Assembly: GCF_902459465.1 (NCBI RefSeq)
Contig: NC_047068.1
Coordinates: forward strand, 8,990,001-9,054,000
Length of the DNA: 64,000 nt
From: Asterias rubens
Taxonomy: Eukaryota
Reading direction: 5' to 3'
Shown here: positions 6,795 to 36,497 of the stretch, piece after piece
How positions within the stretch are numbered: position 1 is the stretch's first letter
Layout of the letters: the number at the start of each line of letters is the position of its first letter
Translations under genes and position numbers: made by a program
The notes under the pieces: model-generated
The model's input: only the letters and a program-made list of their open reading frames with translations
Told to the model about the DNA's origin: nothing
Database searches by the model: none

Positions 6795-7377
6795 AAGTGT
6801 CACCGATGTTTTAAAGAGCCAGTCAAGAGACAATAAGAGCACACCGAGATCCTGGGGACTATTGTAGTTATTATATATTATTCTGATCCAATTTAGCCAG
6901 GGCAGAATTATCCCAGTTCACACCGGTCGCACGGAGAGTGGGCGGGGTGGGGGGGGGGGTTCAGCCGATGGGTGTCTTCCTTTGAAAATGCTGTTTGTCT
7001 TTATCTAATGAAGTTGATTTATGCTGTCTCTTACACATGCACTTAATGCTTCAGTTAGTCTATTGTATATTCTGTTTTAAACTGCCAAAGTTTGTTTTAA
7101 ACTGTCTCGGAGTAAACGCACTATTGAAGGTGTTCCCTGTCGGTTCATGCCGGTCATTGCCGGTGATTAGACTGCCGTGAAGAACAAAACAGATTGGTGT
7201 GAATTGAAATACTCATACAAGTCAAAAGTGAAAGTTCAGCTGAATACAGTGCTGCCTAAACTTGCTGCTAAATCAGGAAATATTCATGGCGACTTCACAG
7301 GAACGTCGAATACATCCACGGTGAGTGATTTCAGCGGGTATCGTATCTCTGGCCACATCAATCGCTAACGGACACCG

Positions 7378-7736
7378 TTATAGTTCAAAGTAGACACAAC
7401 CCTCAATATCCTTGCAGGCTGACCTCCACACAACCAAACTCCTTCTTGAACAACATCTGTGCAGCCGATCCACATACCAACGCTCTCTTTCACTGCCCAT
7501 TCGTAGATGAAGTGGTTTTCTTCTCTTGAATCAGGCACTACGAGGTTGCTCCCTGGTCGCTTGCATATCGCATCGGCTTGCATCCAGTTCATCTTATCAG
7601 GGAGTAAGATGTAGCAAGACTCACGCCATTTTACCCAGCCAGTTGGACACGAGGAGAGGACGATACCAATGCGTTGCATTGTCGTCAATATTAAGAGATG
7701 AAACAGAATGGTATTCATGCTTTGAAGAAACAACAT
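7378..7736 (-). pseudogene. L1: CTLD-PAN lectin copy with an internal deletion of about 0.4 kb
   Basis: Signal peptide plus CTLD N-half (CPTGWVKWRESCY...WIGCTDVVQEGVWLCGGQPA) joined directly and out of frame to the terminal DIEGCVYFEL* sequence. Confidence 0.9.
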
Positions 7737-7806
7737 TATCTTGCTGCTCATCAACTCGGGTCTTGTCACTTATAAACACGGTCTGCCTACTGAATTTAAA
7801 GTGACA

Positions 7807-11345: not shown

Positions 11346-11525
11346 CTTGCATGCCGCCTCGGCTTGTATCCAGTTCATCTTCTCAGGGAGTAAGATGTAG
11401 CAAGACTGACGCCATTTTACCCAGCCAATTGGACAAGAGGAGAGGACGATAACAATGCTTTGTACTGTCATCAATATCAAGAGATGAAACAGAATGAAAT
11501 TCTTTCTTTGAAGAAAAAACATCAT
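11346..11525 (-). pseudogene. L2: 5' fragment of a CTLD-PAN lectin
   Basis: MMFFLQRKNFILFHLLIL...CPIGWVKWRQSCY...EAACK; homology then stops abruptly at a transposon-like segment (about 10590-11340). Confidence 0.85.
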
Positions 11526-13190: not shown

Positions 13191-13919
13191 TTATAGTTCA
13201 AAGTAGACACAACCCTCAATATCCTTGGAGTCGGTTTGATCGTCCTCAAGAATGGTGACGTTGTTGAGTTGACACTTCTTCTCGTTCTCGCTGCTCTGCC
13301 GAACATTAAAGGAGCGGCATCGAGGATCTGATGTACACGCCCAGCCACAAGCAACCACACCCTCTACGGCCAGGTTGTCGATGACGTGTTTGATGGGGCA
13401 GTATTGAGAGACACGCCCATTGTGATCAATCAGGGTGTGGTAAACTGGCACGGTAGGGACCGGCATCTCACATACGGCTTCTTTATAAAATGTGGTATCG
13501 ACATATTTGCAACTTACGTCATCAGACCAAGCTCCACCTTTGAATATAGTCATTCGGGCACAGTTCAACCCTGCGTCGCTGTGAGGCTGGTTCGGATACC
13601 AGTTGGTGAATTTTGCAGGCTGACCTCCACACAGCCAAACTCCTTCTTGAGCAGCATCTGTGCAGCCGATCCATAGACCTCCCTGTCCTTTCACTGCCCA
13701 CTCGAAGATGAAGTCGTTTTCTTCTTTTGACTCAGGCACTATGAGGTTGCTCCCTGGTCGCTTGCATGCCATCTCGGCTTGCATCCAGTTCATCTTCTCA
13801 GGGAGTAAGATGTAGCAAGACTGACGCCATTTTACCCAGCCAGTTGGACAAGAGGAGTGGACGATAACAATGCTTTGCATTGTCATCAATATAAAGAGAT
13901 GAAACAGAATGAAATTCAT
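13191..13919 (-). CDS. L3: secreted C-type lectin + PAN/Apple domain protein, cassette A
   Basis: Intact ORF, 242 aa from the ATG at 13919 (the track starts at an upstream TTG). Hydrophobic leader, CTLD motifs (CPTGW, SCY, AEMAC, WIG, NCARM, WSD, AVCE), and a six-Cys PAN-like C-terminus (C..CGWAC.....CRSFN..C.LN..GCVY). Confidence 0.9.
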   Translation of the reverse strand: MNFILFHLFILMTMQSIVIVHSSCPTGWVKWRQSCYILLPEKMNWMQAEMACKRPGSNLIVPESKEENDFIFEWAVKGQGGLWIGCTDAAQEGVWLCGGQPAKFTNWYPNQPHSDAGLNCARMTIFKGGAWSDDVSCKYVDTTFYKEAVCEMPVPTVPVYHTLIDHNGRVSQYCPIKHVIDNLAVEGVVACGWACTSDPRCRSFNVRQSSENEKKCQLNNVTILEDDQTDSKDIEGCVYFEL

Positions 13920-14199
13920 TTTTTGAAGAAAACACAACAACTATGGTTTCCATGTGTCACTCTAAACACAGTTTTCCACAAGTGTCATCAAAATACCATA
14001 GGTTACCACACCATGTAAAACGACACGTACCCGTCGCACGAGTGACAAGCACAGTTGTGTTACATATTTACCTTCATGCTTGAACAATAATTTTGGAGAG
14101 AGCACAATGGTGATACACTTCGAACTGCTGGTGCGTAAGTAAATTTTGCAAATTAGCTGGCTACAGCCAAACGGTTGGGATGGCAACCAGAAAACACAC

Positions 14200-15013
14200 A
14201 ATAATAATAATAATAATAATAATATCGAAATCGTATATATTGCACGTATCTACCAAACAAGGTACTCAATGCGCCGAGTATTTTTTTATACAAACTTTCA
14301 GAAAGATAGGTTTATTGCAGTGATGAATTTTGAAACCTAATTAGTTAGCGCCTTATCAGAGTTTACAATGTGCTGTGGCGCATACAGCAGCCACAGCCAG
14401 GAACATCGGGGCGCACCCCTTCTCTTTTCGATACGTGCACTGGGTTCTTTTACATGCGTTTACACAACACATGGGACCAACAGTTTTACGTCCCATCCGA
14501 AGGACGAAGCAATGGTTAAGTGTCTTGCTTAAAGACACTGGACACTAATGGCGATTGTCAAAGACTAGTCTTCTCACTTGTTGTATCTCAACGTATGCAT
14601 TAAATAACGAACCAGTGAAAATTTGAGCTCAATCGGTCGTCGAAGTTGCGAGATAATAATGAAAGAAAAAAACACCCTTGTCACACGAAGTTGTGTGCGT
14701 TCAGATGCTTGATTTTGAGACCTCAAATTCTAAACCTGAGGTCTCGTAATCAAATTCGTGGAAAATTACTTCTTTCTCAAAAACTACTCCACTTCAGCCG
14801 TTTCTCACAATGTTTTATTCTACCAACCTCTCCCCATTGCTCGTTACCAAGTAAGGTTTTATGATAATAATTATTTTGAGTAATGACCAATAGTGTCCAC
14901 TGCCTTTAAAGGAAACAATTGTCACGGCTTGGGATTCGAACCCACACTCTGCTGATCAGTAACACCAGAGTTTGAATTCGGTGCTCTTAACCGCTCGGCC
15001 ACGACACTTCCAC
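14200..15013 (-). mobile_element. SINE with nested TTAA MITE (14533-14905)
   Basis: Third copy of the nested SINE::MITE, duplicated with the roughly 2.4-kb lectin unit. Confidence 0.8.
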
Positions 15014-15581
15014 AATAGTGTTACCGATGTTTTAAAGAGCCTGTCAAGAGACAATAGGAGCACACCGAGATCCTGGGAGTATTGTAATTATTATATATTA
15101 TTCTGATCCGATTTATCCAGGGCAGAATTATCCCAGTTCACACCGGTCGAACGGAGAGTGGGCGGGGTGGGGGGGGGGGGGGGTTCAGCCGATGGGTGTC
15201 TTCCTTTGAAAATGTTGATTTATAATGTCTCTTACACATGCACTTAATGCTTCAGTTAGTCTATTGTTCTGTTTTAAACTGCCAAAGTTTGTTTTAAACT
15301 GTCTCGGAGTAAACGCACTATTGAAGGTGTTCCCTTACGGTTCATGCCGGTCATTGCCAGTGGTTAGACTGCATTGAAGAACAAAACAGATTGGTGTGAA
15401 TTGAAATACTCATACAAGTAAAAAGTGAAAGTTCAGCTGAATACAGTGCTGCCTAAACTTGCTGCTAGATCAGGAAATAACTGTCATGGCGATTTCACAG
15501 GAACGTGGAATACATCCACGATGAGTAAGTTGACAGCGGGTACATCGTACGTCTGGCCACATCAATCGCTAACGGACATCG

Positions 15582-16316
15582 TTACAGTTCAAAGTAGACA
15601 CAACCCTCAATATCCTTGGTGTCGGTTTGATCGTCCTCAAGAATGATGACGTTGTTGAGTTGACGCTTCATCTCGTTCTCGCTGCTGTGCCAAACATTAA
15701 AGGAGCGGCAACGAGGATCTGATGTACACGCCCAGCCACAAGCAATCACACCCTCTACGGCCAGGTTGTCGATGACGTGATTGAGGGGCCAGTATTGAGA
15801 GACACGCCCATTGTGATCAATTAGGGTGTGGTAGACTGGCACGGTAGGGACCGGCATCTCACATACGGCTGCTTTAGATGCGGTGCTATTGCATTTTATG
15901 GTATCAGCCCAAAGTCCATCTTGATATCGCGTCATTCGGGCACAGTTCAACCCTGCGTCGCTGTGAGGATTGTTCGGATACCAGTTGGTAAACTTTGCAG
16001 GCTGACCTCCACACAGCCAAACTCCTTCTTGAGCAGCATCTGTGCAGCCGATCCACAAACCTCCATTTGCTACTGCTACCCACCTGAGGATGAAGTCGTT
16101 TTCTTCTCTTGAATAAGGTACTACGAGGTTGCTCCCTGGTCGCTTGCATATCGCCTCAGCTTGCATCCAGTTCATCTTCTCAGGTAGTAAGATGTAGCAA
16201 GACTGACGCCATTTTACCCAGGCAGTTGGACAAGAGGAGAGGACGATAATAATGCTTTGCAATGTCATCAATATCAAGAGATGGAACAGAATGGTATTCA
16301 TGCTTTGAAGAAACAT
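15582..16316 (-). CDS. L4: CTLD-PAN lectin with a hybrid A/B-like cassette; two PAN cysteines lost
   Basis: Intact ORF; the probable start MFLQSMN is at 16316, with in-frame upstream ATGs. YCP becomes YWP and KCQ becomes KRQ. Confidence 0.85.
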   Translation of the reverse strand: MFLQSMNTILFHLLILMTLQSIIIVLSSCPTAWVKWRQSCYILLPEKMNWMQAEAICKRPGSNLVVPYSREENDFILRWVAVANGGLWIGCTDAAQEGVWLCGGQPAKFTNWYPNNPHSDAGLNCARMTRYQDGLWADTIKCNSTASKAAVCEMPVPTVPVYHTLIDHNGRVSQYWPLNHVIDNLAVEGVIACGWACTSDPRCRSFNVWHSSENEMKRQLNNVIILEDDQTDTKDIEGCVYFEL

Positions 16317-17669
16317 TGTAATCACACGCCACAGTAACTCTGGTTTCATTTGAAACATAAACTGACACACAACTGTCTTTCACCAATCATGGATTGAACA
16401 TGCAATCAACAGTGGATACACCACAAGTATACAGCCGAGAGTGTGTGTCCTATCGTCATCTTCACCGATATCAACCGCTTCTGTCAAATCATCTAAAATT
16501 AATAACTGTTTTTGTTTTAAGTGCTCTAAGTGTCTCTTACAAGTTCACTAAATAATGAGCCTAATGGATTCGAAGCCAGCGAAAACAAGGGACCCGATGG
16601 AGGTAGACGATCAAATAATTACACTAAGAATAATTTATTCGATTTCTGAAAAAGGATGATTATACAAATAATGGATGCATATGCATTAGAGATTATCGCA
16701 GCATTATATAATCCCAAGGTAGATATTGTCTTCTTTGTTTCATAAATAAATAAGGGAATAAAAGGGTAGCGACGAGTTCTTATACACTACCGTTTAAAAC
16801 CGGCTGGGTCGTGGCCGTGCGATAAAGGCTCGAGCCGAAGGTTTTAAACTACAAGGTTTTAAACGACAAGGTTAAACGGCAGTTTAAGAACGAGTCACTG
16901 CTCTTCTATACCCATGCATAATTGCCTTTTTGGTTAACAGGAGTAATGAAGTAAAAAACAAAATTGACTCCCATAAATGGCCGACCATGTTAGTCGACGA
17001 GGTAAACAGAAAAACTGTGCAATTTCGAGGCATGTTTATGCGGATCATTGTATTCTACTTTTACAGCATCTTTCCATCTATGCGCATTTATTAACAAACG
17101 GTTACAAACGCTTTTCAAAGATCAACTCGATCTATCCGAGGCAACGTGTTCCTTTAAATGCAAAAGAGTGAAAAACAAAACACTCAATGAAGAACAACAG
17201 TGGTTAAGAACTCATCAATTAACAGTCGCAACAACAGTCAGGCGGTTGCAATACTAATGGAAATATCCAGCAACACACCGAGAACATTGATTCACTTTCT
17301 ACATGATAGTGTTTTTTGTTGTCAACGCAACTTGTAGGTTAAGTTACAAGGAAAGAGATATTACAGTCACAAGTGAAAAGTTAAGCTGTGAACGTTATTA
17401 TACTTATTGAGATATCAGGAAGATATCATAAAGATGTTGAATAAAGAAAGTTAGCCTGCACGGTCTCAAAAAGTCGTGCTGTTCAAGAAAACCAATTCAC
17501 GCGACTTGTGCTATAGACATAAAACAATCCCCCAAAATACAGCACAAAAAGATACTAACCTTTCTCTAATATCAAGAATAATTGTCAGTGAATGAAAATG
17601 AAATGCTTTCATAAGAATCACCTGCTTAGCACATGGAAATCTTGCTTAATAGTAAAAACAGTTCACGAA

Positions 17670-18048
17670 AGACAGTGGATACTATTGGCAATTACTCAAA
17701 ATAATTATTAGCATAAAACCTAACTTGGTAATGAGTTATGGGGAGAGGTTGACAGTGTAAAACATTGTGAGAAACGGCTCCCTCTGAAGTGATGTAGTTT
17801 TCGAGAAGGAAGTAATTCTCTACGAATTTGATTTCGAGGCCTCCAGTTTAGAATTTTGAGGTCTTGAAATCAAGCACCTGAAAGCACACAACTTCGTGTG
17901 ACCAGGGTGTTTTTTCTTTGATTAATATCTCGCAACTTCGATGACCAATTGAGCTAAAATGTTCACAGGTTGGTTATTTTATGCATATGTTGAGATACAT
18001 CAAGTGAGAAGACTTGTCATTGACAATTACCAATAGTGTCCAGCGTCT
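17670..18048. mobile_element. TTAA MITE (AGACAGTGG family), opposite orientation
   Basis: Same TIR family as 6403-6690. Other copies or fragments at about 10090-10440, 21050-21325, 25790-26065, 28985-29265, 37765-38130, 38221-38598, 40428-40780, 42353-42705, 60120-60498 and 61955-62340. Confidence 0.75.
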
Positions 18049-18052
18049 TTAA

Positions 18053-18413
18053 AGGGTCTATGTACTTTTTGTAGGACAAAAAACACAATGTCCACAGATT
18101 TACATTAAACTTACACCGTTTGAAGATAATGATAGTAGAAAGCTTCTCGAAAAATATAACTTGCCTCGGTGCTGTAGTTTTTGAGAAATGAGTAAAAGAA
18201 TTCAAGAAAATAAGTTTCGTCTCAGTGATCATGAGACGAAAATTATTTTAGCATGTAAAAACGTAATTTCATGACATTGTTTTACTCATTTCTCAACAAC
18301 TACAACACCTCAGCAAGTAATATTTTCAGGAAAGCTTTCTACTATCATTATCATCAAACGGTGTAAGTTTAATGTAAATCTGTGGACATTGTGTTTTGTG
18401 TTACAAAAAGTAC
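18053..18413. mobile_element. Long-TIR foldback MITE sharing a TTAA with the preceding MITE
   Basis: Arms of about 150 bp (CAAAAAACACAATGTCCACAGATTTACATTAAACTTACACCGTTTGA... and its reverse complement). Begins TTAA|AGG. Repeated at about 21330-21670 and 26065-26410. Confidence 0.7.
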
Positions 18414-18853
18414 CCAAACAGCCAATATTCCATAAAGTTTTCATTATTGCGATTGTCGTTTTGTCCTAAGCAAAACAATGTTTCAAGCTTTTTTCTGCTA
18501 AACAGCTTTGTAAAAAACTGTGCAATACCGATCATATTTGCTGATATCCGATTCATCCAGAGCAGGATTGTTCCAGTTCACAAGGATCGACCGGGTGGTA
18601 TTCAGCCAATGGGACCTTCATTAATTTGAAGATGTTTGTCTCATAAAATTGATTCATACGTCTCTTACATTAACATAATGCTTCGGTTAGTCTGGATTTA
18701 CTTTTAAACCGTCAATTTTGTTTAGAACTGCCGCAATCGAACGCACTACTGTGAATGAGTGTCAGTTCATGTCAGTCTTTGGCGGTGATTAGACTGCATC
18801 AAACAACAACAAAGCAGAAGTTTCCAAAATATATGATTTGCTGATTTAAATAC

Positions 18854-19588
18854 TCAAAGGTTAAAGTAGACACAACCCTCGACGTCATGGGAATCGGTCT
18901 GATCATTCTCAAGACGAGTGACGTCATTGAGCTGAGATTTCTTCTCTTTCTCGCTTCTCTGCCAAACATTAAAGGAGCGGCATTGAGGATCTGATGTACA
19001 CGCCCAGCCACAAGCAATCACACCCTCTACGGCCAGGTTGTCGATGACGTGATTGAGGGGGCAGTATTGATAGACACGCCCATCGGGACCTAGCAGGGTG
19101 TGGTAGATTGGCACAGTAGGGGCCGGCATCTCACATGCAGCAAATTTATGGATGCCATTCTTGCAACTTATGTTATCAGACCAAACTCCAGGTGCTTGAA
19201 CTGTCATTCGGGCACAGTTCAAGTTCATGTCGTTTCTTGGGTTGTCGTTTTTCCAATTTGTGAATCTTGCAGGCTGACCTCCGCACAGCCAAACTCCTTC
19301 TTGAGCAGCATCTGTGCAGCCGATCCACAGACCTCCCTTCCCTTTCACTGCCCACTCGAAGATGAAGTCGTTTTCTTCTTTTGACTCAGGCACTATGAGG
19401 TTGCTCCCTGGTCGCTTGCATATCGCCTCGGCTTGCACCCAGTTCATCTTCTCAGGTAGTAAGATGTAGCAAGACTGACGCCATTTTACCCAGCCAGTTG
19501 GACAAGAGGAGAGGACGATAACAATGCTTTGCATTGTCATCAATATCAAGAGATGGAACAGAATGGAGTTCATGCTTTGAAGAAACAT
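18854..19588 (-). CDS. L5: CTLD-PAN lectin, cassette C
   Basis: Intact ORF from the probable ATG at 19588. WKNDNPRNDMNLNCARMTVQAPGVWSDNISC cassette. PAN Cys5 is replaced by Ser. Confidence 0.9.
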   Translation of the reverse strand: MFLQSMNSILFHLLILMTMQSIVIVLSSCPTGWVKWRQSCYILLPEKMNWVQAEAICKRPGSNLIVPESKEENDFIFEWAVKGKGGLWIGCTDAAQEGVWLCGGQPARFTNWKNDNPRNDMNLNCARMTVQAPGVWSDNISCKNGIHKFAACEMPAPTVPIYHTLLGPDGRVYQYCPLNHVIDNLAVEGVIACGWACTSDPQCRSFNVWQRSEKEKKSQLNDVTRLENDQTDSHDVEGCVYFNL

Positions 19589-22053
19589 TGTAATCACACG
19601 CCACAGTAACTCTGGTTTCATTTGAAACATAAACTGACACATCTGTCTTTCACCAATCATGGATTGAACATGCAATCAACAGTGGATACACCACAATTAT
19701 ACAGCCGATAGTGTGTGTCCTATCGTCACCTTCACCGATTTCAACCGCTTCTGTCAAATCATCTAAAATTAATAACTGTTTTTGTTTTAAGTGCTCTGAG
19801 TGTCTCTTACAAGTTTACTAAAATAATGAGCCGAATGGATTCGAAGCCAGAAAGCATAATTTATTCAATTTTTGAAAAAGGATGACTATACAAATAATGG
19901 ATGCATCTGCATTAGAGAATTATCGCAGCAATATATAATCCTAAGGTAGATATTGTTTTCTTTGTTTCATAAATAAATAAGGGAATACAAGGGTAGCGAC
20001 GAGTTCTGACACTACCGTTTAAACCGGCAGGGTCGTGGCCGTGCGATGAAGGCTCGAGCCGAAGGTTTTAAACTACAAGGTTTTAAACGACAAGGTTTAA
20101 CGGCAGTTTAAGAACGAGTCACTGCTCTTCTATTCCCATGCATAAATGCCTTTTTGGTTATAAAGGGGTAATGAAGTAAAACAAAAAATGTACTCCCATA
20201 AATGGCCGACCATGTTAGTCTACGAGGTAAAAAGAAAACTGTGCAATTTCGAGGCATGTTTATGTGGATCATTGTATTCTACTTTTACAGCATCTTTCCA
20301 ACCATGTGCATTTATTAACAAACGGTTACAAACGCGTTTCAAAGATCAACTCGACCGAAACGAGGCAACGTGTTCCTTTAAATGCAAAAGAGTGAAAAAC
20401 AAAACACTCAATGAAGAACAACAGTGTTTAAGCACTCATCAATTAACAGTCGCAACAACAGTCAGGCGGTTGCAATACTAATGGGAATATTCAGCAACAC
20501 ACCGAGAACATTGATTCACTTTCTACATGATAGTTTTTTTTGTTGTCAACGCAACTTGTAGGTTAAGTTACAAGGAAAGAGATATTACAGTCACAAGTGA
20601 AAAGTTAAGGTGTGAACGTTATTATACTTATTGAGATATCAGGAAGATATCATAAAGATATTGAATAAAGAAAGTAAGCCTGGTCTCAAAAAGTCGTGCT
20701 GTTCATTGGCCTCCCTTTGTCTGAGATCCTGACGTAAATACGAGACAACACACATGAAAGTGAGTCTGGTGCTTTTTTGTACATTCATTCTCTATAATAA
20801 ACTGCGTGGTTTTGTTTTCATTACACGTCAAAGCAATGTAGGTTGAAACCCAATGTTAAAAAGAAAACCAATTCTCGCGACTCGTGCTATAGACATGTAA
20901 AATCCCCCTGAAATACAGTACAAAAAGATACTAACCTTTCTCTAATATCAAGAATCATTGTCAGTGAATGAAAATGAAATGCTTTCATAAGAATCACCTG
21001 CTTAGCACATGGAAATCTTGCTTAATAGTAAAAACAGGTCACGGTGAAGAACGGCTCCCTCTGAAGTGATATAGTTTTCGAGAAAGAAGTAATTCTCTAC
21101 GAATTTGATTTCGAGACCTCAAATGCAGAACTTGAGGTTTTGAAATCAAGCACCTGAAAGCACACAACTTCGTGTGACCAGGGTGTTTTTTCTTTGATTA
21201 ATATCTCGCAACTTCGATGACCAATTGAGCTCAAATTTTCACAGGTTGGTTATTTTATGCATATGTTGAGATACATCAGGTGAGAAGACTTGTCGTTGAC
21301 AATTACCAATAGTGTCCAGCGTCTTTAAAGGACAAAAAACACAATGTCCACAGATTTACATTAAACTTACACCGTTTGAAGATAATGATAGTAGAAAGCT
21401 TCTCGAAAAATATAACTTGCCTCGGTGCTGTAGTTTTTGAGAAATGAGTAAAAAATTTCAAGAAAATAAGTTTCGTCTCAGTGATCATGAGACGAAAATT
21501 ATTTTAGCATGTAAAAACGTATTTTCATGACATTGTTTTACTCATTTCTCAAAACCTACAGCACCTCAGCAAGTAATATTTTCAGGAAAGCTTTCTACTA
21601 TCATTATCATCAAACGGTGTAAGTTTAATGTAAATCTGTGGACATTGTGTTTTGTGTTACAAAAAGTACCCAAACAGCCAATATTCCATAAAGTTTTCAT
21701 TATTGCGACTGGTGCTCCACTCGTTTTGTCCTAAGCAAAACAATGTTCCAAGTTTTTTTTCTGCTAAACAGCTTTATAAAAAACTGTGCAATACTGATCA
21801 CATTTGCTGATCCGATTCATTAATTTGAAGATGTTTGTCTCATAAAATTGATTCATTACGTCTCTTACATTAACATAATGCTTCGGTTAGTCTGGATTTA
21901 CTTTTAAACCGTCAATTTTGTTTAGAACTGCCGCAATCGAACGCACTACTGTGAATGAGTGTCAGTTCATGTCAGTCTTTGGCGGTGACTAGACTGCATC
22001 AAACAACAACAAAGCAGAAGTTTCCAAAAGATATGATTTGCTGATTTAAATAC

Positions 22054-22782
22054 TCAAAGGTTAAAGTAGACACAACCTTCGACGTCATGGGAATCGGTCT
22101 GATCATTCTCAAGACGAGTGACGTCATTGAGCTGACATTTCTTCTCTTTCTCGCTTCTCTGCCAAACATTAAAGGAGCAGCATCGAGGATCTGATGTACA
22201 CGCCCAGCCACAAGCAATCACACCCTCTACGGCCAGGTTGTCGATGACGTGATTGAGGGGGCAGTATTGAGAGACGCGCCCATCGGGACCTAGCAGGGTG
22301 TGGTAAACTGGCATGGTAGGGGCCGGCATCTCACATACGACTGCTTTAGTTGCGGTGCCATTGCATTTTAAGTTATCAGACCAAGGTCCATTTTTTATCA
22401 TTCGGGCACAGTTATAACGTGTGTCTTCCAACGTGAAGTCTGTTTTCCAGTTGGTAAATCTTGCAGGCTGACCTCCACACAACCAAACTCCTTCTTGAGC
22501 AGCATCTGTGCAGCCGATCCACATACCGCCATTCCCTTTCACTGCCCACTCGAAGATGAAGTCGTTTTCTTCTCTTGAATCAGGTACTACGAGGTTGCTC
22601 CCTGGTCGCTTGCATATCGCCTCGGCTTGCATCCAGTTCATCTTCTCAGGGAGTAAGATGTAGCAAGACTGACGCCATTTTACCCAGCCAGTTGGACAAG
22701 AGGAGAGGACGATAACAATGCTTTGCATTGTCATCAATATCAAGAGATGGAACAGAATGGAGTTCATGCTTTGAAGAAACAT
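22054..22782 (-). CDS. L6: CTLD-PAN lectin, cassette B
   Basis: Intact ORF from the probable ATG at 22782. WKTDFTLEDTRYNCARMIKNGPWSDNLKC cassette. Confidence 0.9.
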   Translation of the reverse strand: MFLQSMNSILFHLLILMTMQSIVIVLSSCPTGWVKWRQSCYILLPEKMNWMQAEAICKRPGSNLVVPDSREENDFIFEWAVKGNGGMWIGCTDAAQEGVWLCGGQPARFTNWKTDFTLEDTRYNCARMIKNGPWSDNLKCNGTATKAVVCEMPAPTMPVYHTLLGPDGRVSQYCPLNHVIDNLAVEGVIACGWACTSDPRCCSFNVWQRSEKEKKCQLNDVTRLENDQTDSHDVEGCVYFNL

Positions 22783-25700
22783 TGTAATCACACGCCACAG
22801 TAACTCTGGTTTCATTTGAAACATAAACTGACACATCTGTCTTTCACCAATCATGGATTGAACATGCAATCAACAGTGGATACACCACAAGTATACAGCC
22901 GATAGTGTGTGTCCTATCGTCACCTTCACCGATTTCAACCGCTTCTGTCAAATCATCTAAAATTAATAACTGTTTTTGTTTTAAGTGCTCTGAGTGTCTC
23001 TTACAAGTTTACTAAAATAATGAGCCTAATGGATTCGAAGCCAGAAAGCATAATTTATTCATTTTTTGAAAAAGGATGACTATTACAAATAATGGATGCA
23101 TCTGCATTAGAGAATTATCGCAGCAATATATAATCCTAAGGTAGATATTGTTTTCTTTGTTTCATAAATAAATAAGGGAATACAAGGGTAGCGACGAGTT
23201 CTTACACTACCGTTTAAACCGGCAGGGTCGTGGCCGTGCGATGAAGGCTCGAGCCGAAGGTTTTAAACTACAAGGTTTTAAACGACAAGGTTAAACGGCA
23301 GTTTAAGAACGAGTCACTGCTCTTCTATTCCCATGCATAAATGCCTTTTTGGTTAAAAGGAGTAATGAAGTAAAAAAAAAAATGTACTCCCATAAATGGC
23401 CGACCATGTTAGTCGACGAGGTAAAAAGAAAACTGTGCAATTTCGAGGCATGTTTATGTGGATCATTGTATTCTACTTTTACAGCATCTTTCCAACCATG
23501 TGCATTTATTAACAAACGGTTACAAACGCTTTTCAAAGATCAACTCGACCGATCCGAGGCAACGTGTTCCTTTAAATGCAAAAGAGTGAAAAACAAAACA
23601 CTCAATGTAGAACAACAGTGTTTAAGCACTCATCAATTAACAGTCGCAACAACAGCCAGGCGGTTGCAATACTAATGGGAATATTCAGCAACACACCGAG
23701 AACATTGATTCACTTTCTACATGATAGTGTTTTTTTGTTGTCAACGCAACTTGTAGGTTAAGTTACAAGGAAAGAGATTTTACAGTCACAAGTGAAAAGT
23801 TAAGGTGTGAACGTTATTATACTTATTGAGATATCAGGAAAATGTCATAAAGATATTGAATAAAGAAAGTAAGCCTGCACGGTCTCAAAAAGTCGTGCTG
23901 TTCATTGGCCTCCCTTTGTCTGAGATCCTGACGTAAATACGAGACAACACACATGAAAGTGAGTCTGGTGCTTTTTTGTACATTCATTCTCTATAATAAA
24001 CTGCGTGGTTTTGTTTTCATTACACGTCATAGCAATGTAGGTTGAAACCCAATGTTAAAAAGAAAACCAATTCACGCGACTCGTGCTATAGACATGTAAA
24101 ATCACCCTGAAATACAGTACAAAAAGATACTAACCTTTCTCTAATATCAAGAATCATTGTCAGTGAATGAAAATGAAATGCTTTCATAAGAATCACCTGC
24201 TTAGCACATGGAAATCTTGCTTAATAGTAAAAACAGGTCACGGTGAAGAACGGCTCCCCTTTGAAGTGATATAGTTTTCGAGAAAGAAGTAATTCTCTAC
24301 GAATTTGATTTCGAGACCTCAAGTTTAGAACTTATAAAACACTGTGCAATACTGATCACATTTGCTGATCCGATTCATCCAGAGCAGGATTGTTCCAGTT
24401 CACAAGGATCGACCGGGTGGTAATCAGCCAACAAAGGACCTACTGGGAAGCTTAAATCAAGCAGTGACTTATAAATATTCGGCCTCAATATTGCCATGAT
24501 GATTTGCAGTGTGACGTCAAATTGTTTATTATATTATTTGTTTAATTTGTTCTTAAAAATTTGTTGATATCATTTCCTAAACTAATTTGAAATAGAGGTT
24601 GTTGTTACCATGACATCCGTTTTTATATTTTACCTTGTTTCAATAAGGTACACATTAATAATAAAACTGCTATTTATAACTACAATTTTAAAGCAAAACA
24701 TAATGAACACATTTGTGTGGACTCTATTGTTATTTAGCTATCTGCTGCTGTTGCTTCAGCTGTTGTTGTAGTTGCTGTATATATATATAGGCATGGGTAT
24801 AATCCACATAGAAGCCTGGCTGATGGAGCAGTGTACTTCATTCCCGACCTCTTTAAAATTGCGTAGTTTTCCTTTTACTTTACGAACTAACAAGGTCGGC
24901 CATTTATGGGAGTCAAAATTTTGACTCCCATATATGGCCGACCATGTTAGTCGACGAGGTAAAAAGAAAACTGTGGAATTTCGAGGCATGTTTATGTGGA
25001 TCATTGTATTCTACTTTTACAGCATCTTTCCAACCATGTGCATTTATTAACAAACGGTTACAAACGCTTTTCAAAGATCAACTCGACCGATCCGAGGCAA
25101 CGTGTTCCTTTAAATGCAAAAGAGTGAAAAACAAAACACTCAATGAAGAACAACAGTGTTTAAGCACTCATCAATTAACAGTCGCAACAACAGTCAGGCG
25201 GTTGCAATACTAATGGGAATATCCAGCACCACACCGAGAACATTGATTCACTTTCTACATGATAGTGTTTTTTTGTTGTCAACGCAACTTGTAGGTTAAG
25301 TTACAAGGAAAGAGATATTACAGTCACAGGTGAAAAGTTAAGGTGTGAACGTTATTATACTTATTGAGATATCAGGAAGATATCATAAAGATATTGAATA
25401 AAGAAAGTAAGCCTGCACGGTCTCAAAAAGTCGTGCTGTTCATTGGCCTCCCTTTGTCTGAGATCCTGACGTAAATACGAGACAACACACATGAAAGTGA
25501 GTCTGGTGCTTTTTTGTACATTCATTCTCTATAATAAACTGCGTGGTTTTGTTTTCATTACACGTCAAAGCAATGTAGGTTGAAACCCAATGTTAAAAAG
25601 AAAACCAATTCTCGCGACTCGTGCTATAGACATGTAAAATCCCCCTGAAATACAGTACAAAAAGATACTAACCTTTCTCTAATATCAAGAATCATTGTCA

Positions 25701-26790
25701 GTGAATGAAAATGAAATGCTTTCATAAGAATCACCTGCTTAGCACATGGAAATCTTGCTTAATAGTAAAAACAGGTCACGGTGAAGAACGGCTCCCTCTG
25801 AAGTGATATAGTTTTCGAGAAAGAAGTAATTCTCTACGAATTTGATTTCGAGACCTCAAATGCAGAACTTGAGGTTTTGAAATCAAGCACCTGAAAGCAC
25901 ACAACTTCGTGTGACCAGGGTGTTTTTTCTTTGATTAATATCTCGCAACTTCGATGACCAATTGAGCTCAAATTTTCACAGGTTGGTTATTTTATGCATA
26001 TGTTGAGATACATCAGGTGAGAAGACTTGTCGTTGACAATTACCAATAGTGTCCAGCGTCTTTAAAGGACAAAAAACACAATGTCCACAGATTTACATTA
26101 AACTTACACCGTTTGAAGATAATGATAGTAGAAAGCTTCTCGAAAAATATAACTTGCCTCGGTGCTGTAGTTTTTGAGAAATGAGTAAAAAATTTCAAGA
26201 AAATAAGTTTCGTCTCAGTGATCATGAGACGAAAATTATTTTAGCATGTAAAAACGTATTTTCATGACATTGTTTTACTCATTTCTCAAAACCTACAGCA
26301 CCTCAGCAAGTAATATTTTCAGGAAAGCTTTCTACTATCATTATCATCAAACGGTGTAAGTTTAATGTAAATCTGTGGACATTGTGTTTTGTGTTACAAA
26401 AAGTACCCAAACAGCCAATATTCCATAAAGTTTTCATTATTGCGACTGGTGCTCCACTCGTTTTGTCCTAAGCAAAACAATGTTCCAAGTTTTTTTTCTG
26501 CTAAACAGCTTTATAAAAAACTGTGCAATACTGATCACATTTGCTGATCCGATTCATTAATTTGAAGATGTTTGTCTCATAAAATTGATTCATTACGTCT
26601 CTTACATTAACATAATGCTTCGGTTAGTCTGGATTTACTTTTAAACCGTCAATTTTGTTTAGAACTGCCGCAATCGAACGCACTACTGTGAATGAGTGTC
26701 AGTTCATGTCAGTCTTTGGCGGTGACTAGACTGCATCAAACAACAACAAAGCAGAAGTTTCCAAAAGATATGATTTGCTGATTTAAATAC

Positions 26791-27534
26791 TCAAAGGTTA
26801 AAGTAGACACAACCTTCGACGTCATGGGAATCGGTCTGATCATTCTCAAGACGAGTGACGTCATTGAGCTGACATTTCTTCTCTTTCTCGCTTCTCTGCC
26901 AAACATTAAAGGAGCAGCATCGAGGATCTGATGTACACGCCCAGCCACAAGCAATCACACCCTCTACGGCCAGGTTGTCGATGACGTGATTGAGGGGGCA
27001 GTATTGAGAGACGCGCCCATCGGGACCTATCAGGGTGTGGTAAACTGGCACGGTAGGGACCGGCATCTCACATACGGCTTCTTTATAAAATGTGGTATCG
27101 ACATATTTGCAACTTACGTCATCAGACCAAGCTCCACCTTTGAATATAGTCATTCGGGCACAGTTCAACCCTGCGTCGCTGTGAGGCTGGTTCGGATACC
27201 AGTTGGTGAATTTTGCAGGCTGACCTCCACACAGCCAAACTCCTTCTTGAGCAGCATCTGTGCAGCCGATCCACATACCGCCATTCCCTTTCACTGCCCA
27301 CTCGAAGATGAAGTCGTTTTCTTCTCTTGAATCAGGTACTACGAGGTTGCTCCCTGGTCGCTTGCATATCGCCTCGGCTTGCATCCAGTTCATCTTCTCA
27401 GGGAGTAAGATGTAGCAAGACTGACGCCATTTTACCCAGCCAGTTGGACAAGAGGAGAGGACGATAACAATGCTTTGCATTGTCATCAATATCAAGAGAT
27501 GGAACAGAATGGAGTTCATGCTTTGAAGAAACAT
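26791..27534 (-). CDS. L7: CTLD-PAN lectin, L6 scaffold carrying cassette A
   Basis: Intact ORF. Matches L6 outside about 27030-27273 and matches L3 inside that interval. Confidence 0.9.
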   Translation of the reverse strand: MFLQSMNSILFHLLILMTMQSIVIVLSSCPTGWVKWRQSCYILLPEKMNWMQAEAICKRPGSNLVVPDSREENDFIFEWAVKGNGGMWIGCTDAAQEGVWLCGGQPAKFTNWYPNQPHSDAGLNCARMTIFKGGAWSDDVSCKYVDTTFYKEAVCEMPVPTVPVYHTLIGPDGRVSQYCPLNHVIDNLAVEGVIACGWACTSDPRCCSFNVWQRSEKEKKCQLNDVTRLENDQTDSHDVEGCVYFNL

Positions 27535-29360
27535 TGTAATCACACGCCACAGTAACTCTGGTTTCATTTGAAACATAAACTGACACATCTGTCTTTCACC
27601 AATCATGGATTGAACATGCAATCAACAGTGGATACACCACAAGTATACAGCCAATAGTGTGTGTCCTATCGTCACCTTCACCGATTTCAACCGCTTCTGT
27701 CAAATCATCTAAAATTAATAACTGTTTTTGTTTTAAGTGCTCTGAGTGTCTCTTACAAGTTTACTAAAATAATGAGCCTAATGGATTCGAAGCCAGAAAG
27801 CATAATTTATTCATTTTTTGAAAAAGGATGACTATACAAATAATGGATGCATCTGCATTAGAGAATTATCACAGCAATATATAATCCTAAGGTAGATATT
27901 GTTTTCTTTGTTTCATAAATAAATAAGGGAATACAAGGGTAGCGACGAGTTCTTACACTACCGTTTAAACCGGCAGGGTCGTGGCCGTGCGATGAAGGCT
28001 CGAGCCGAAGGTTTTAAACTACAAGGTTTTAAACGACAAGGTTAAACGGCAGTTTAAGAACGAGTCACTGCTCTTCTATTCCCATGCATAAATGCCTTTT
28101 TGGTTAAAAGGAGTAATGAAGTAAAACAAAAATGTACTCCCATAAATGGCCGACCATGTTAGTCGACGAGGTAAAAAGAAAACTGTGCAATTTCGAGGCA
28201 TGTTTATGTGGATCATTGTATTCTACTTTTACAGCATCTTTCCAACCATGTGCATTTATTAACAAACGGTTACAAACGCTTTTCAAAGATCAACTCGACC
28301 GATCCGAGGCAACGTGTTCCTTTAAATGCAAAAGAGTGAAAAACAAAACACTCATAGAAGAACAACAGTGTTTAAGCACTCTTCAATTAACAGTCGCAAC
28401 AACAGTCAGGCGGTTGCAATACTAATGGGAATATTCAGCAACACACCGAGAACATTGATTCACTTTCTACATGATATTTTTTTTTTTGTCAACGCAACTT
28501 GTAGGTTAAGTTACAAGGAAAGAAATATTACAGTCACAAGTGAAAAGTTAAGCTGTGAACGTCATTATACTTATTGAGATATCAGGAAGATATCATAAAG
28601 ATATTGAATAAAGAAAGTAAGCCTGGTCTCAAAAAGTCGTGCTGTTCATTGGCCTCCCTTTGTCTGAGATCCTGACGTAAATACGAGACAACACACATGA
28701 AAGTGAGTCTGGAGCTTTTTTGTACATTCTCTATAATAAACTGCGTGGTTTTGTTTTCATTACACGTCAAAGCAATGTAGGTTGAAACCCAATGTTAAAA
28801 AGAAAACCAATTCACGCGACTCGTGCTATAGACATGTAAAATCCCCCTAAAATACAGTACAAAAAGATACTAACCTTTCTCTAATATCAAGAATCATTGT
28901 TAGTGAATGAAAATGAAATGCTTTCATAAGAATCACCTGCTTAGCACATGGAAATCTTGCTTAATAGTAAAAACAGGTCACGGTGAAGAACGGCTCTCCT
29001 TTGAAGTGATATAGTTTTCGAGAAAGAAGTAATTCTCTACGAATTTGATTTCGAGACCTCAAGTTTAGAACTTGAGGTCTTGAAATCAAGCACCTGAAAG
29101 CACACAACTTCGTGTGACCAGGGTGTTTTTTCTTTGATTAATATCTCGCAACTTCGATGACCAATTGAGCTCAAATGTTCACAGGTTGGTTATTTTATGC
29201 AAATGTTGAGATACATCAAGTGAGAAGACTTGTCGTTGACAATTACCAATAGTGTCCAGCGTCTTTAATGTCCCATCCAAAGGACAAAGCAATTATGGTT
29301 TAGTATCTTGCTCAATGAAACAAGTTCCAGACAAGGACTCAAACCTATAATATATATATA

Positions 29361-32730: not shown

Positions 32731-33499
32731 TCAAAGGTTAAAGTAGACACAACCCTCGACGTCATGGGAATCGGTCTGATCATTCTCAAGACGAGTGACG
32801 TCATTGAGCTGACATTTCTTCTCTTTCTCGCTTCTCTGCCAAACATTAAAGGAGCGGCATCGAGGATCTGATGTACACGCCCAGCCACAAGCAACCACAC
32901 CCTCTACGGCCAGGTTGTCGATGACGTGTTTGATGGGGCAGTATTGAGAGACACGCCCATTGTGATCAATCTGGGTGTGGTAAACTGGCACGGTAGGGAC
33001 CGGCATTTCACATACGGCTTCTTTAGTAAATGTGGTATCGACATTGCAACTTACGTCATCAGACCAAGCTCCACCGTTGTATATAGTCATTCGGGGTCAG
33101 TTCAACCCTGCGTCGCTGTGAGGATGGTTCGGATACCAGTTGGTAAATTTTGCAGGCTGACCTCCACACAGCCAAACTCCTTCTTGAGCAGCATCTGTGC
33201 AGCCGATCCACATACCAACGCTCCCTTTCACTGCCCACTCGAAGATGAAGTCGTTTTCTTCTCTTGAATCAGGCACTATGATGTTGCTCCCTGGGCGCTT
33301 GCACGCCGCCTCGGCTTGCATCCAGTTCATATTATTCTCAGTGAGTAAGATGTAGCAAGACTGACGCCATTTTACCCAGCCAGAACAAGGACAAGAGGAG
33401 AGGACAAGAGGAGAGGACGATAACAATGCTTTGTATTGTCATCAATATCAAGAGATGAAACAGAGTGGTATTCATTCTTTGATAAAATAAAAACACCAT
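32731..33499 (-). pseudogene. L8: full-length CTLD-PAN pseudogene with a cassette A variant
   Basis: A 13-bp tandem duplication GGACAAGAGGAGA (33389-33414) frameshifts just after the leader. There is also an in-frame TGA at 33099-33097 replacing the NCAR cysteine. Confidence 0.9.
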
Positions 33500-34820: not shown

Positions 34821-35783
34821 ATAGAGAAACCTTCTTCCTCCATGGAGATACGCAGTCAAATTCTACACAAACATGCAAGTACATGCACATGCACGTACTG
34901 GGTACATTACACACATACGTGGACACAGCTTGCAGACGACCAAAAGTAAGCTTTCCAGGTCTGTGTTTTGATTGGTCGTTCGAGGTGACTTCAGACCAAT
35001 CAAAACAAACCCAGCTACGGTAGCTTTTAGTCACTGCATTTATCCATTGGTATCATTGTATCCAATGGAATCACTTGATCTGAGTAGCGGGTACTTAATC
35101 CTTGCGGATAAAGACAGGGGCCCAGTCTGTCTACTATAAAACTTACGATAACAAAATTTGGGCTAAAAGACATTTATTCAAAAGGGGGCAATAGGGGAAC
35201 TGGAAATCTATGATTATGTAGGTTTCTCCAGAAATTAAGGTAATTTAAATTCATAGAATCATAGTAAAACTGTATCTTGGGGATATAGTTATAAACCAAG
35301 TTAGCTTGCGGTGAGTGGAATTGTTGATGTTGTGTTTTTTGGGGCTCCCATTAATATTGCTTAAGTGTGTGACCAAAACAAAATCCCATAGTTTATTGGA
35401 CATAGATATTCAAATTCACCAGACTCGCAGGCTCGTTAATTTTCCTATTAACGTCAGAAACCCTGAAATAGCAAACGCCAATGTAGAATGAGGGCATTTA
35501 AGACCACCGCTCAATATCACATGATGAAGATGACACTGCCTAAATCGATATGAGGAATATTAGTTTAAGAATAACTATCTGTTGATTGATTTTACACGAC
35601 CTTCCTTGTATAAGTGAATCAAAGAAACCTCCAAATTTGATAATTTGGATAATTGCAATAAAACATAGATCAATATTGTCATAAATGCTCAGAGTAGACA
35701 CGAAGCTCTTCCGAAGCAGAACAAAAACACTGGCAGGTCGACAGTATATGGAACCTTTTTAGGTTGTTAGCGAGAGAATAGTG

Positions 35784-36497
35784 ATGTTTCTTCGAAGCTT
35801 GAATATCATTCTGTTTCATCTCTTGATATTGATGACAATCGTCCTCTCCTCTTGCCCAACTGGCTGGGTAAAATGGCGTCAGTCTTGCTACATCTTACTC
35901 CCTGATAAGATGAACTGGATGCAAGCTGAGGCGGCATGCAAGCGACCAGGGAGCAACCTCATAGTGCCTGACTCAAGGGAAGAAAACGACTTCATCTTCA
36001 ATTGGTTAGCAACAGAAAATACAGGTTTGTGGATCGGCTGCACAGATGCTGCTCAAGAGGGAGTATGGTTGTGTGGAGGTCAGCCTGCAAGATTTACCGA
36101 CTGGAAAACAGACTTCCCGTTGGAAGACTCACGTTATAACTGTGCCCGAATGATGAAAAATGGACCTTGGTCTGATAACTTAAAATGCAATGGCACCGCA
36201 ACTAAAGCAGTCGTATGTGAGATGCCGGCCCCTTCCATGCCAGTTTACCACACCCTGCTAGGTCCCGATGGGCGTGTCTCTCAATACTGCCTCCTCCATC
36301 ACGTCATCGACAACCTGGCCGTAGAGGGTGTGATTGCTTGTGGCTGGGCGTGTACATCAGATCCTCGATGCCGCTCCTTTAATGTTTGGCAGAGCAGCAT
36401 GAAAGAGAAGAAATGTCAGCTCAATGACGTCACTCGTCTTGATAATGATCAGACCGATTCCCATGACATCGAAGGTTGTGTTTACTTTGAACTTTGA
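35784..36497 (+). CDS. L9: CTLD-PAN lectin, cassette B
   Basis: Intact ORF with ATG at 35784. The leader is about 5 aa shorter. WKTDFPLEDSRYNCARMMKNGPWSDNLKC cassette. Confidence 0.9.
   Translation: MFLRSLNIILFHLLILMTIVLSSCPTGWVKWRQSCYILLPDKMNWMQAEAACKRPGSNLIVPDSREENDFIFNWLATENTGLWIGCTDAAQEGVWLCGGQPARFTDWKTDFPLEDSRYNCARMMKNGPWSDNLKCNGTATKAVVCEMPAPSMPVYHTLLGPDGRVSQYCLLHHVIDNLAVEGVIACGWACTSDPRCRSFNVWQSSMKEKKCQLNDVTRLDNDQTDSHDIEGCVYFEL

What the first reader, a model, noticed from the sequence alone, without database searches (positions are those of the whole stretch)
13429..27273. 245-bp perfect cassette transfer between L3 and L7, 13.6 kb apart
By eye, 13429-13673 and 27029-27273 are identical. 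Outside that tract L7 is identical to its neighbour L6 in both the 5' and 3' coding parts, including the private PRCCSFN, whereas L3 differs there. L6 carries cassette B at the same position. The tract spans WIG to YHTL, almost exactly the binding cassette. This is a clean, very recent gene-conversion (or double-crossover) event that gives a new specificity on an unchanged scaffold.
Basis: seen in the sequence. Interest (0 to 1): 0.85.

Follow-up and report, generated by a model that had tools for sequence, protein, structure and literature searches.

The report
Lectin binding-loop patch copied between paralogues
In a sea-star cluster of a dozen near-identical lectin genes, one gene carries a 245-base stretch (its ligand-contact half) copied exactly from a gene 13.6 kb away. 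This is a clean but ordinary case of gene conversion, and it still needs checking in the raw reads.

Summary
Window 13429-13673 and 27029-27273 are identical over 245 bp, with a mismatch immediately outside each end. L7 equals its neighbour L6 over 2,029 bp around the tract. It differs from L6 at 62 positions inside 27030-27234. L3 and L7 differ at 10.6% of sites in the coding flanks. Chance is excluded (P about 1e-12; 0 of 20,000 permutations).

The genes are intronless, secreted C-type-lectin-domain plus PAN-like genes of an asteriid sea star. The tract covers the second half of the lectin domain. The array is a mosaic throughout: hypervariable cassettes have several-fold higher synonymous divergence than the scaffolds, and the three gene segments have different nearest relatives.

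The best reading is a recent non-reciprocal ectopic gene conversion from L3 to L7, with a tract of 205-245 bp (confidence about 0.7).

- The cassette is not a new specificity; it is an existing one copied.
- Sugar binding is not shown, because the canonical EPN/QPD motif is absent.
- Recency is only bounded, at under about 1.2% divergence.

Read-level confirmation was not possible. Only assembled contigs of public runs were available, and they have no power at the diagnostic junction. An assembly artefact or false duplication remains at about 0.2.

This is a new example of a known process and of moderate interest. Earlier notes of this scan flagged the same array and similar ones elsewhere in this genome.

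The parts
27029..27273 (-). Converted tract in L7, maximal extent (identical to L3). It encodes WIGCTD... to ...VYHTL, the second half of the C-type lectin domain plus a short linker.
27030..27234 (-). Minimal tract. All 62 L6/L7 differences lie here, and the segment is 15 bp longer than in L6.
13429..13673 (-). Donor copy of the tract in L3.
26791..27534 (-). L7 coding sequence (247 aa from the ATG at 27534, stop included). It is an intact chimera with an L6 5' part, the L3 cassette and an L6 3' part.
13191..13919 (-). L3 coding sequence (donor gene). Its own flanks differ from L7 by 10.6%.
22054..22782 (-). L6 coding sequence. It is the scaffold twin of L7 and carries cassette B at 22293-22482.
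25419..27652 (.). L7 side of the block with no L6/L7 difference (the L6 side is 20682-22900), interrupted only by the tract. The duplicated units outside this block are about 2% diverged.
27235..27273 (-). 5' junction interval: 39 bp identical in L3, L6 and L7, inside the nearly invariant WIGCTDAAQEGVW block.
27028..27030 (-). 3' junction, resolved to 1 bp. Position 27028 has the L6 state and not the L3 state; 27030 has the L3 state and not the L6 state. The 29 31-mers that span both are unique in the window.
32731..33426 (-). L8, a broken paralogue (in-frame stop in GLN*PRM, no start codon) with a related cassette A'. It is itself a mosaic: L3-type just after the cassette, L6-type at the 3' end.
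35781..36497 (+). L9, on the opposite strand. It shares cassette B with L6 at 96.9% nt against 88% in the 5' scaffold, which points to an older cassette exchange.

Best explanation
L7 is the product of a recent non-reciprocal ectopic (interlocus) gene conversion. L7 is an L6-type member of a tandem array of intronless secreted genes with a C-type lectin domain and a PAN-like domain. It was repaired using L3, 13.6 kb away in the same orientation, as template. A tract of 205-245 bp of L3 replaced the L6-type sequence. The 5' end of the tract resolved inside a 39-bp block that is identical in all three genes (the WIGCTDAAQEGVW codons). The 3' end resolved just after the YHTL codons. The patch covers the long-loop region and the beta3-beta5 strands of the lectin domain, the part that contacts ligand in solved C-type lectin domains. 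L7 therefore now presents L3's loops on L6's N-terminal half, PAN-like domain and upstream region. Shown here: the sequence pattern, its statistical significance, the direction of transfer, and the mosaic nature of the whole array. Inferred: the repair mechanism, the germline origin, and any functional consequence. One variant I find attractive but cannot test is a single repair event with template switching (L6, then L3, then L6). It would explain why the 2,029-bp L6/L7 identity and the 245-bp L3/L7 identity both show no substitution at all.
For: The 245-bp identity ends abruptly at both sides. L6 and L7 are identical over 1,611 + 418 bp around it, while L3 and L7 differ by 10.6% in the coding flanks, giving P about 1e-12. 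The Sawyer-type permutation test gives 0 of 20,000. Direction: the L7 unit matches the L6 unit over 4.1 kb, and A-type cassettes sit natively before IDHNG in L3, L4 and L8. The 3' junction has only 1 bp of shared identity between the L3 and L6 states, so a k-mer or overlap-graph mis-threading could not create it. L3 and L7 are similar only over about 740 bp of coding DNA at 93%, too short for long-read mis-recruitment. A gap-free assembly through 2-kb exact repeats implies long reads (inference). Conversion is recurrent in this array. Synonymous divergence is 0.36-0.99 in the hypervariable part against 0.06-0.25 in the scaffolds. The three gene segments have different nearest neighbours. Further significant shared runs occur for L6-L9, L5-L6, L3-L4 and L10-L12.
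Against: There is no read-level confirmation. A run search with the 60-bp junction listed no run, though only 2 words were sampled. In the four runs laid (three samples), every contig that covers 27030 reads the non-chimeric G, and the L7-private bases 27653A and 27871A are not seen. In sample S1, contigs specific for cassette A have about the same depth as the contig specific for L8's cassette (206, 191 vs 191 in X1; 260, 231 vs 257 in X2). The assembly predicts a 2:1 ratio. All k-mers of the eight S1 contigs I rebuilt occur in the window, so S1 may be the assembled animal. Power is poor, however. Position 27043 has zero laid depth in X1 and X2 even though L3 must cover it. Logan contigs also drop minority paralogue variants. 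A junction 37-mer was absent from the metagenome contigs, but that collection held only one relevant sea-star contig.
Confidence: 0.7

Rival explanations
1. Assembly or consensus artefact: the true L7 carries cassette B, or the L7 unit does not exist, and the A cassette was written in during read correction, consensus or polishing.
For: The chimeric junction and the L7-private SNPs are not seen in any laid contig or in the junction word search. The depth ratio of cassette A to L8's cassette is about 1:1 in S1, not 2:1. The perfect identity of both L7/L6 and L7/L3 is what consensus bleed would give. An extra 1,538-bp partial duplication lies between L6 and L7.
Against: Polishing cannot replace 62 differences that include a 15-bp length change. 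The 3' junction has 1 bp of shared identity, so graph mis-threading is excluded. L3 and L7 share only about 740 bp at 93%, too little for long-read mis-recruitment. The region is gap-free, and the N gap lies 18 kb away at 45350-45849. The contigs used have no power at the junction: depth at 27043 is zero even for L3.
Confidence: 0.17
2. False tandem duplication of two haplotypes: 'L6' and 'L7' are alleles of one locus, one carrying cassette B and one carrying a converted cassette A, placed head to tail by the assembler. The conversion from L3 is then real, but it is an allelic polymorphism and not a second locus.
For: The units are about 2% diverged outside the identical block, which is allele-like for a sea star. 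Per-copy depths in S1 are most self-consistent if L7 is present on one haplotype only: about 127-142 for four contigs (my arithmetic). The A to A' depth ratio is well under 2.
Against: The two units are separated by their own 590-bp unique segment and a 1,538-bp partial repeat inside one contig. False duplications usually sit at contig ends or gaps. The depth figures from contigs are noisy; X2 gives 70-257.
Confidence: 0.08
3. Unconverted island: L7 began as a duplicate of L3, and L6-derived conversion overwrote both flanks, sparing the cassette.
For: Across the array the scaffolds are homogenised while the cassettes are spared.
Against: The L7 unit is L6-type for 4.1 kb, including parts about 2% diverged from L6 that lie outside the identical block. 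The L3 unit has a different period and different spacers. This reading would still need a very recent copy of L3 to explain 245 of 245 identity.
Confidence: 0.02
4. Programmed or somatic cassette exchange: a dedicated diversification system in which conserved DNA anchors and broken donor copies (L1, L2, L8) feed cassettes into expressed genes.
For: Mosaic breakpoints recur near the WIG block and the NCARM block. Truncated or broken copies lie in the array. The anchors are almost invariant at the DNA level.
Against: An assembly consensus reflects the germline. No enzyme or signal sequence was identified. The cassette types have orthologues in Asterias amurensis, as expected for ordinary old paralogues. 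The recurrence of breakpoints is explained equally well by resolution in the best-matching DNA plus selection.
Confidence: 0.03

Closest known systems
Interlocus (ectopic) gene conversion in tandem immune-receptor families, for example the NKG2 C-type lectin-like receptor genes (PMC2195720 turned up in the search, abstract only, not read further). MHC and Ly49/KLR examples are from my own knowledge.
   Same: A short non-reciprocal tract between paralogues in cis, embedded in diverged flanks. The result is a mosaic gene, and the family shows patchwork relationships.
   Different: Here the tract coincides almost exactly with the ligand-contact half of the domain. It moved into a gene whose scaffold is identical to a neighbour's. 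The family (lectin domain plus PAN-like domain, intronless, asteroid-specific expansion) has no published description that I could find.
Sp185/333 (SpTransformer) gene cluster of the purple sea urchin (PMC5103432, PMC1988830, PMC3342357; found, abstracts only)
   Same: An echinoderm immune-type family of clustered, very similar genes in which recombination and conversion among members are proposed to generate mosaics of sequence elements.
   Different: It is an unrelated protein with no lectin domain. Its diversity lies in presence or absence of elements and in repeats flanked by microsatellites, not in one hypervariable cassette between invariant anchors.
Chicken immunoglobulin V diversification by pseudogene-templated gene conversion (own knowledge)
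   Same: Short templated patches are copied from nearby, partly defective, family members into the binding region of a functional gene.
   Different: That process is somatic, depends on AID and is directional from a pseudogene pool. Nothing here shows somatic activity or dedicated machinery, and the donor L3 is an intact gene.
Diversity-generating retroelements acting on C-type-lectin-fold variable regions (PMC4372165, found, abstract only)
   Same: Diversity is focused on the ligand-binding part of a C-type lectin fold.
   Different: Those elements are prokaryotic or phage-borne and use mutagenic reverse transcription with adenine-specific changes. Here the copy is exact, and the only reverse transcriptase nearby belongs to a Penelope-like transposon.

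Membership tests
C-type lectin-like domain (Pfam PF00059) | Significant match to the domain profile and to solved C-type lectin domains | tested here: met
   Lectin_C E-values of 1e-11 to 1e-12 for L3, L6 and L7, above the gathering score; 144 PDB sequences match, including PLA2R, DEC-205, mannose receptor and DC-SIGN.
Calcium-dependent carbohydrate-binding C-type lectin | EPN or QPD tripeptide and the WND motif at the principal Ca2+/sugar site | tested here: not met
   the aligned tripeptide is QPH (cassette A), NPR (C) or FTL (B), and WND is replaced by WSD. Positions were assigned by alignment, not by structure. Sugar binding is therefore not established.
PAN/apple domain (Pfam PF00024) | Profile match of the C-terminal 80 residues above the curated cut-off | tested here: inconclusive
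   L3 scores 20.3 bits against a cut-off of 21.4 (E 5e-4), and L6 and L7 have no hit; the homologues P0021, P0022 and P0024 carry a precomputed PF00024 hit.
Interlocus gene conversion | A tract of identity between paralogues bounded by diverged flanks and significant against site permutation | tested here: met
Interlocus gene conversion | Non-reciprocal: the donor keeps its own sequence and the recipient alone is changed | tested here: met
   L3 keeps cassette A in its native flanks and holds no B-type sequence. L7 alone is chimeric.
Interlocus gene conversion | The recombinant molecule exists in unassembled reads of the organism | not testable with these tools
   Only Logan contigs were served. 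They do not cover 27043 even for L3, and the run search sampled only 2 junction words.
Programmed or somatic templated diversification (Ig pseudogene conversion, VLR assembly) | Somatic variation among cells, a dedicated deaminase, and donor cassettes that are not expressed themselves | not testable with these tools
   No tissue-resolved reads were available. The donor L3 is an intact ORF.
Diversity-generating retroelement | Template/variable repeat pair with adenine-specific differences next to a DGR-type reverse transcriptase | tested here: not met
   The two copies are identical. The nearby RT ORF at 29796-31184 carries RVT_1 plus GIY-YIG, the Penelope-like architecture.

The most novel reading that the evidence does not exclude
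The array works as a germline, or even somatic, cassette-exchange system. Nearly invariant DNA anchors (the WIGCTDAAQEGVWLCGGQPA codons on one side, the NCARM and CEMP...YHTL codons on the other) act as preferred recombination sites. Whole ligand-binding cassettes, including those kept in broken copies such as L8, are repeatedly moved between expressed scaffolds. L7 would then be the newest product of this process. That would be an invertebrate analogue of pseudogene-templated receptor diversification.
Probability: 0.05. Interest if true: 0.85.

Novelty: new member of a known kind. Interest (0 to 1): 0.35.

Why it matters
If the junctions hold up in raw reads, L7 is an unusually clean natural experiment. 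L6 and L7 are two adjacent genes with identical upstream DNA, identical N-terminal half and identical PAN-like domain, and they differ only in the ligand-contact half of the lectin domain. L3 and L7 share that half on different scaffolds. Expressing the three proteins would show directly what the cassette determines. At the family level, the contrast between old cassettes and young, homogenised scaffolds shows how conversion and selection together shape an echinoderm recognition-gene array. As a mechanism it adds nothing new: gene conversion in tandem immune-type families is well known.

Tried and rejected
1. A run search with the 60-bp 3' junction sampled only 2 words and listed nothing. This is uninformative.

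2. Laying four runs on 26450-27950 returned only Logan contigs. These break at every paralogue branch point and drop minority variants, and no contig at all covers 27043. The junction could be neither confirmed nor refuted.

3. Copy-number inference from contig depths was not decisive. Per-copy depths are roughly self-consistent under 'no L7' (167-206), under 'L7 on one haplotype' (127-142, with L8 an outlier at 191), and less so under 'homozygous L7' (95-125, with L8 at 191). X2 is too noisy to use.

4. An exact look-up of the L7, L6 and L5 proteins among 15 billion sequences found none. The L3 query in that call began at the wrong residue and tests nothing.

5. A metagenome scan for a junction 37-mer gave 0 hits. 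A control with a conserved 36-mer found one contig of a different species, about 87% identical, so that collection hardly samples this animal.

6. I fetched the Asterias rubens locus of P0007 to test the species assignment. It is a different locus with two paralogues at about 87% nt, so it does not settle whether the window is A. rubens.

7. The bacterial promoter/terminator scan is irrelevant for a eukaryotic gene and was ignored.

8. Rejected readings: a chance match (P about 1e-12), a DGR (exact copy, Penelope-type RT), and an unconverted island (the L7 unit is L6-type over 4.1 kb).
Full report
WHAT IS THERE

The window has about 40% G+C and one 500-N gap at 45350-45849. Between 7 and 44 kb it holds about a dozen copies of one intronless gene.
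- On the minus strand: L1 (truncated, 7365-7769), an L2 fragment near 11346, L3 (13191-13940 as an ORF), L4, L5, L6 (22054-22869), L7 (26791-27621) and L8 (broken).
- On the plus strand: L9 to L12.

Each gene encodes a signal peptide, a C-type lectin-like domain and a cysteine-rich C-terminal domain. The lectin domain matches Pfam Lectin_C at E 1e-11 to 1e-12 and 144 solved C-type lectin domain sequences. The C-terminal domain matches PAN only weakly: L3 scores 20.3 bits against a cut-off of 21.4, though some homologues carry the Pfam hit.

The closest public proteins are from Asterias amurensis and A. rubens, at 80-89% by tblastn against the window. Patiria and Acanthaster follow at 50-56%. 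The animal is therefore an asteriid sea star. Earlier notes of this scan call the genome Asterias rubens. I could not verify that: the one A. rubens locus I fetched is a different locus.

A Penelope-like retroelement ORF (RVT_1 plus GIY-YIG) lies at 29796-31184, between L7 and L8.

THE OBSERVATION

Window 13429-13673 and 27029-27273 are identical, and the identity stops at the very next base on both sides. On the minus strand the tract reads from WIGCTD to VYHTL.

L7 and L6 are identical over 25419-27029 and 27235-27652, which is 1,611 + 418 bp. All 62 L6/L7 differences within that block, with a 15-bp length difference, fall in 27030-27234. The replaced segment is therefore between 205 and 245 bp long.

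L3 and L7 differ at 51 of 481 positions in the coding flanks. At that divergence, 245 matching bases have a probability of about 1e-12. In a Sawyer-type test on the nine intact copies, L3 and L7 share a run of 87 consecutive concordant sites out of 211 polymorphic sites. No run that long occurred in 20,000 permutations.

DIRECTION OF TRANSFER

L7 is the recipient, for two reasons.
- Its whole repeat unit matches the L6 unit over about 4.1 kb: 24924-29073 against 20192-24333. This includes parts that are about 2% diverged. The L3 unit has a different period and different spacers.
- In L3, L4 and L8 an A-type cassette is followed by IDHNG. L7 has IGPDG, in which only the isoleucine codon is of the A type.

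That layout also rules out L7 being an old L3-like gene whose flanks were overwritten.

THE JUNCTIONS

The 5' end of the tract lies somewhere in 27235-27273. These 39 bp are identical in L3, L6 and L7, and they sit inside the block encoding WIGCTDAAQEGVW, which hardly varies among the copies even at the DNA level.

The 3' end is resolved to a single base. Position 27028 has the L6 state and 27030 has the L3 state.

This sharpness bears on the artefact question. An assembler that mis-threads a graph needs a shared k-mer or overlap, and here the shared identity is 1 bp. Polishing cannot introduce 62 differences that include a length change. L3 and L7 resemble each other only over about 740 bp at 93%, too little for long reads to be recruited to the wrong locus. 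The region runs without gaps through 2-kb exact repeats, which implies a long-read assembly. That last point is inference.

THE ARRAY AS A WHOLE

Synonymous divergence between cassette types is 0.36-0.99 in the hypervariable part, from NW to CEMP. In the two scaffolds it is 0.06-0.25. dN/dS is about 0.6-1.5 in the hypervariable part and about 0.2-0.6 in the scaffolds for most pairs.

Cassette types have counterparts in Asterias amurensis. The hypervariable part of L5 is 90% identical to that of P0003, and that of L6 is 73% identical to that of P0004. The cassettes are therefore old lineages, while the scaffolds are young or homogenised.

The 5' scaffold, the tract and the 3' scaffold each give different nearest neighbours. 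For example, L6 and L9 lie on opposite strands and share cassette B at 96.9%, yet their 5' scaffolds are only 88% alike. Several other pairs show significant shared runs. L8 is itself a mosaic.

L7 is thus the youngest and cleanest example of a process that has shaped the whole array. The 2.2-kb block with no L6/L7 difference, set in units that are otherwise about 2% diverged, is itself evidence of a separate or simultaneous L6/L7 homogenisation. A single repair event with template switching would explain both zero-divergence tracts, but that is speculation.

WHAT THE TRACT ENCODES

By alignment to solved lectin domains and to the Pfam model, the tract starts at the WIG strand. It covers the long-loop region, the position of the EPN/QPD motif, the WND-type strand and the last two cysteines.

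The EPN/QPD position, however, reads QPH, NPR or FTL, and WND reads WSD. Calcium-dependent sugar binding is not established and the ligand is unknown.

The event also did not create a new specificity. It placed a second copy of L3's loops on L6's scaffold and upstream region.

READ-LEVEL EVIDENCE

This is the weak point of the case.

The run search on 25800-28100 found runs holding up to 71% of the sampled words. The 60-bp junction query sampled only 2 words and listed no run.

I laid X1 and X2 (one sample, S1), X3 and X4 on 26450-27950. All four are Logan contigs. The results were:
- Every contig covering 27030 reads G, the common paralogue state.
- The L7-private bases at 27653 and 27871 are not seen.
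- The L6/L7-private bases at 26916 and 27013 are not seen either.
- Cassette A itself is present without any difference, at 27050-27138 and 27157-27238.
- The variant with six differences is exactly L8's cassette.

Every 31-mer of the eight S1 contigs I rebuilt occurs in the window, so S1 may well be the assembled animal. In S1 the A-specific and L8-specific contigs have about equal depth, whereas the assembly predicts 2:1. That is the one observation that sits badly with a homozygous L7 carrying cassette A. It fits a heterozygous L7, a falsely duplicated haplotype, or an artefact.

Against reading too much into this: no laid contig covers 27043 in X1 or X2, although L3 must contain it. Two-copy variants that the assembly certainly holds are also missing from the contigs. 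The contigs therefore have no power at the diagnostic junction.

Other look-ups did not help. The exact proteins are not in the public collection. The metagenome scans were uninformative.

VERDICT

The best explanation is a recent ectopic gene conversion from L3 into L7 (about 0.7). An assembly artefact stands at about 0.17, and a falsely duplicated haplotype that still carries a real conversion at about 0.08.

'Recent' means under about 1.2% divergence (95% bound from 0 of 245 differences) and younger than the L6/L7 unit divergence of about 2%.

The process is well known in tandem immune-type families. The literature searches found no description of it for this sea-star family. I rate it a new member of a known kind, of moderate interest, with a simple decisive test still to be done on the raw reads.

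Noticed in passing
window 25419-27652 vs 20682-22900: L6 and L7 units show no difference over 2.2 kb apart from the cassette, yet they are about 2% diverged on both sides. This indicates a second, longer homogenisation tract between L6 and L7, or one repair event with template switching.
   Followed up: partly
window 23386-24333 vs 24924-25870; 24334-24923: A 1,538-bp partial tandem duplication of the spacer (98% identical), with a 590-bp segment that does not align to the corresponding part of the duplicate, lies between L6 and L7. This makes the L6-L7 spacing 4.7 kb instead of 3.2 kb. The segment would be a good anchor for read or PCR tests.
   Followed up: partly
window 22054-22782 (L6) and 35781-36497 (L9): L6 and L9 lie on opposite strands, 13 kb apart. 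They share cassette B with no synonymous difference in the hypervariable part, while their 5' scaffolds have dS 0.215. This looks like an older cassette exchange in inverted orientation.
   Followed up: partly
window 32731-33492 (L8): L8 is a broken copy: an in-frame stop replaces the Cys of NCARM, and there is no start codon. It carries a related cassette A'. It is also a mosaic, with L3-type sequence just after the cassette and L6-type sequence at the 3' end.
   Followed up: partly
window 29796-31184 (element roughly 29.3-31.9 kb): A Penelope-like retroelement ORF (reverse transcriptase plus GIY-YIG nuclease) lies between L7 and L8. The reads show very high copy depth from 27878 onward, which indicates a repeat.
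   Followed up: no
window 26916 (codon of PRCC in L6 and L7): The L6/L7-private Arg-to-Cys change in the PAN-like domain adds an odd cysteine. That base is absent from all contigs of the four runs laid.
   Followed up: partly
window 39497-44024 (L10-L12): L10 and L11 are 1,925-bp-period tandem copies with identical cassettes. L12 shares its 5' part with L11 (46 concordant polymorphic sites) but then diverges, and its ORF ends early.
   Followed up: partly
L002:8493-9259 and L002:10001-10714 (Asterias rubens LR699098.1, about 12.5 Mb): Two paralogues of the family lie side by side in A. rubens, but only one is a called gene in the public annotation. The family is probably under-annotated.
   Followed up: no
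L001 (JACSEG010013666.1): A contig filed among the metagenome contigs carries one and a half tandem copies of the same family from another sea-star species (about 87% nt). The WIGCTDAAQEGVW DNA block matches the window's sequence exactly over the 36 bases searched.
   Followed up: no
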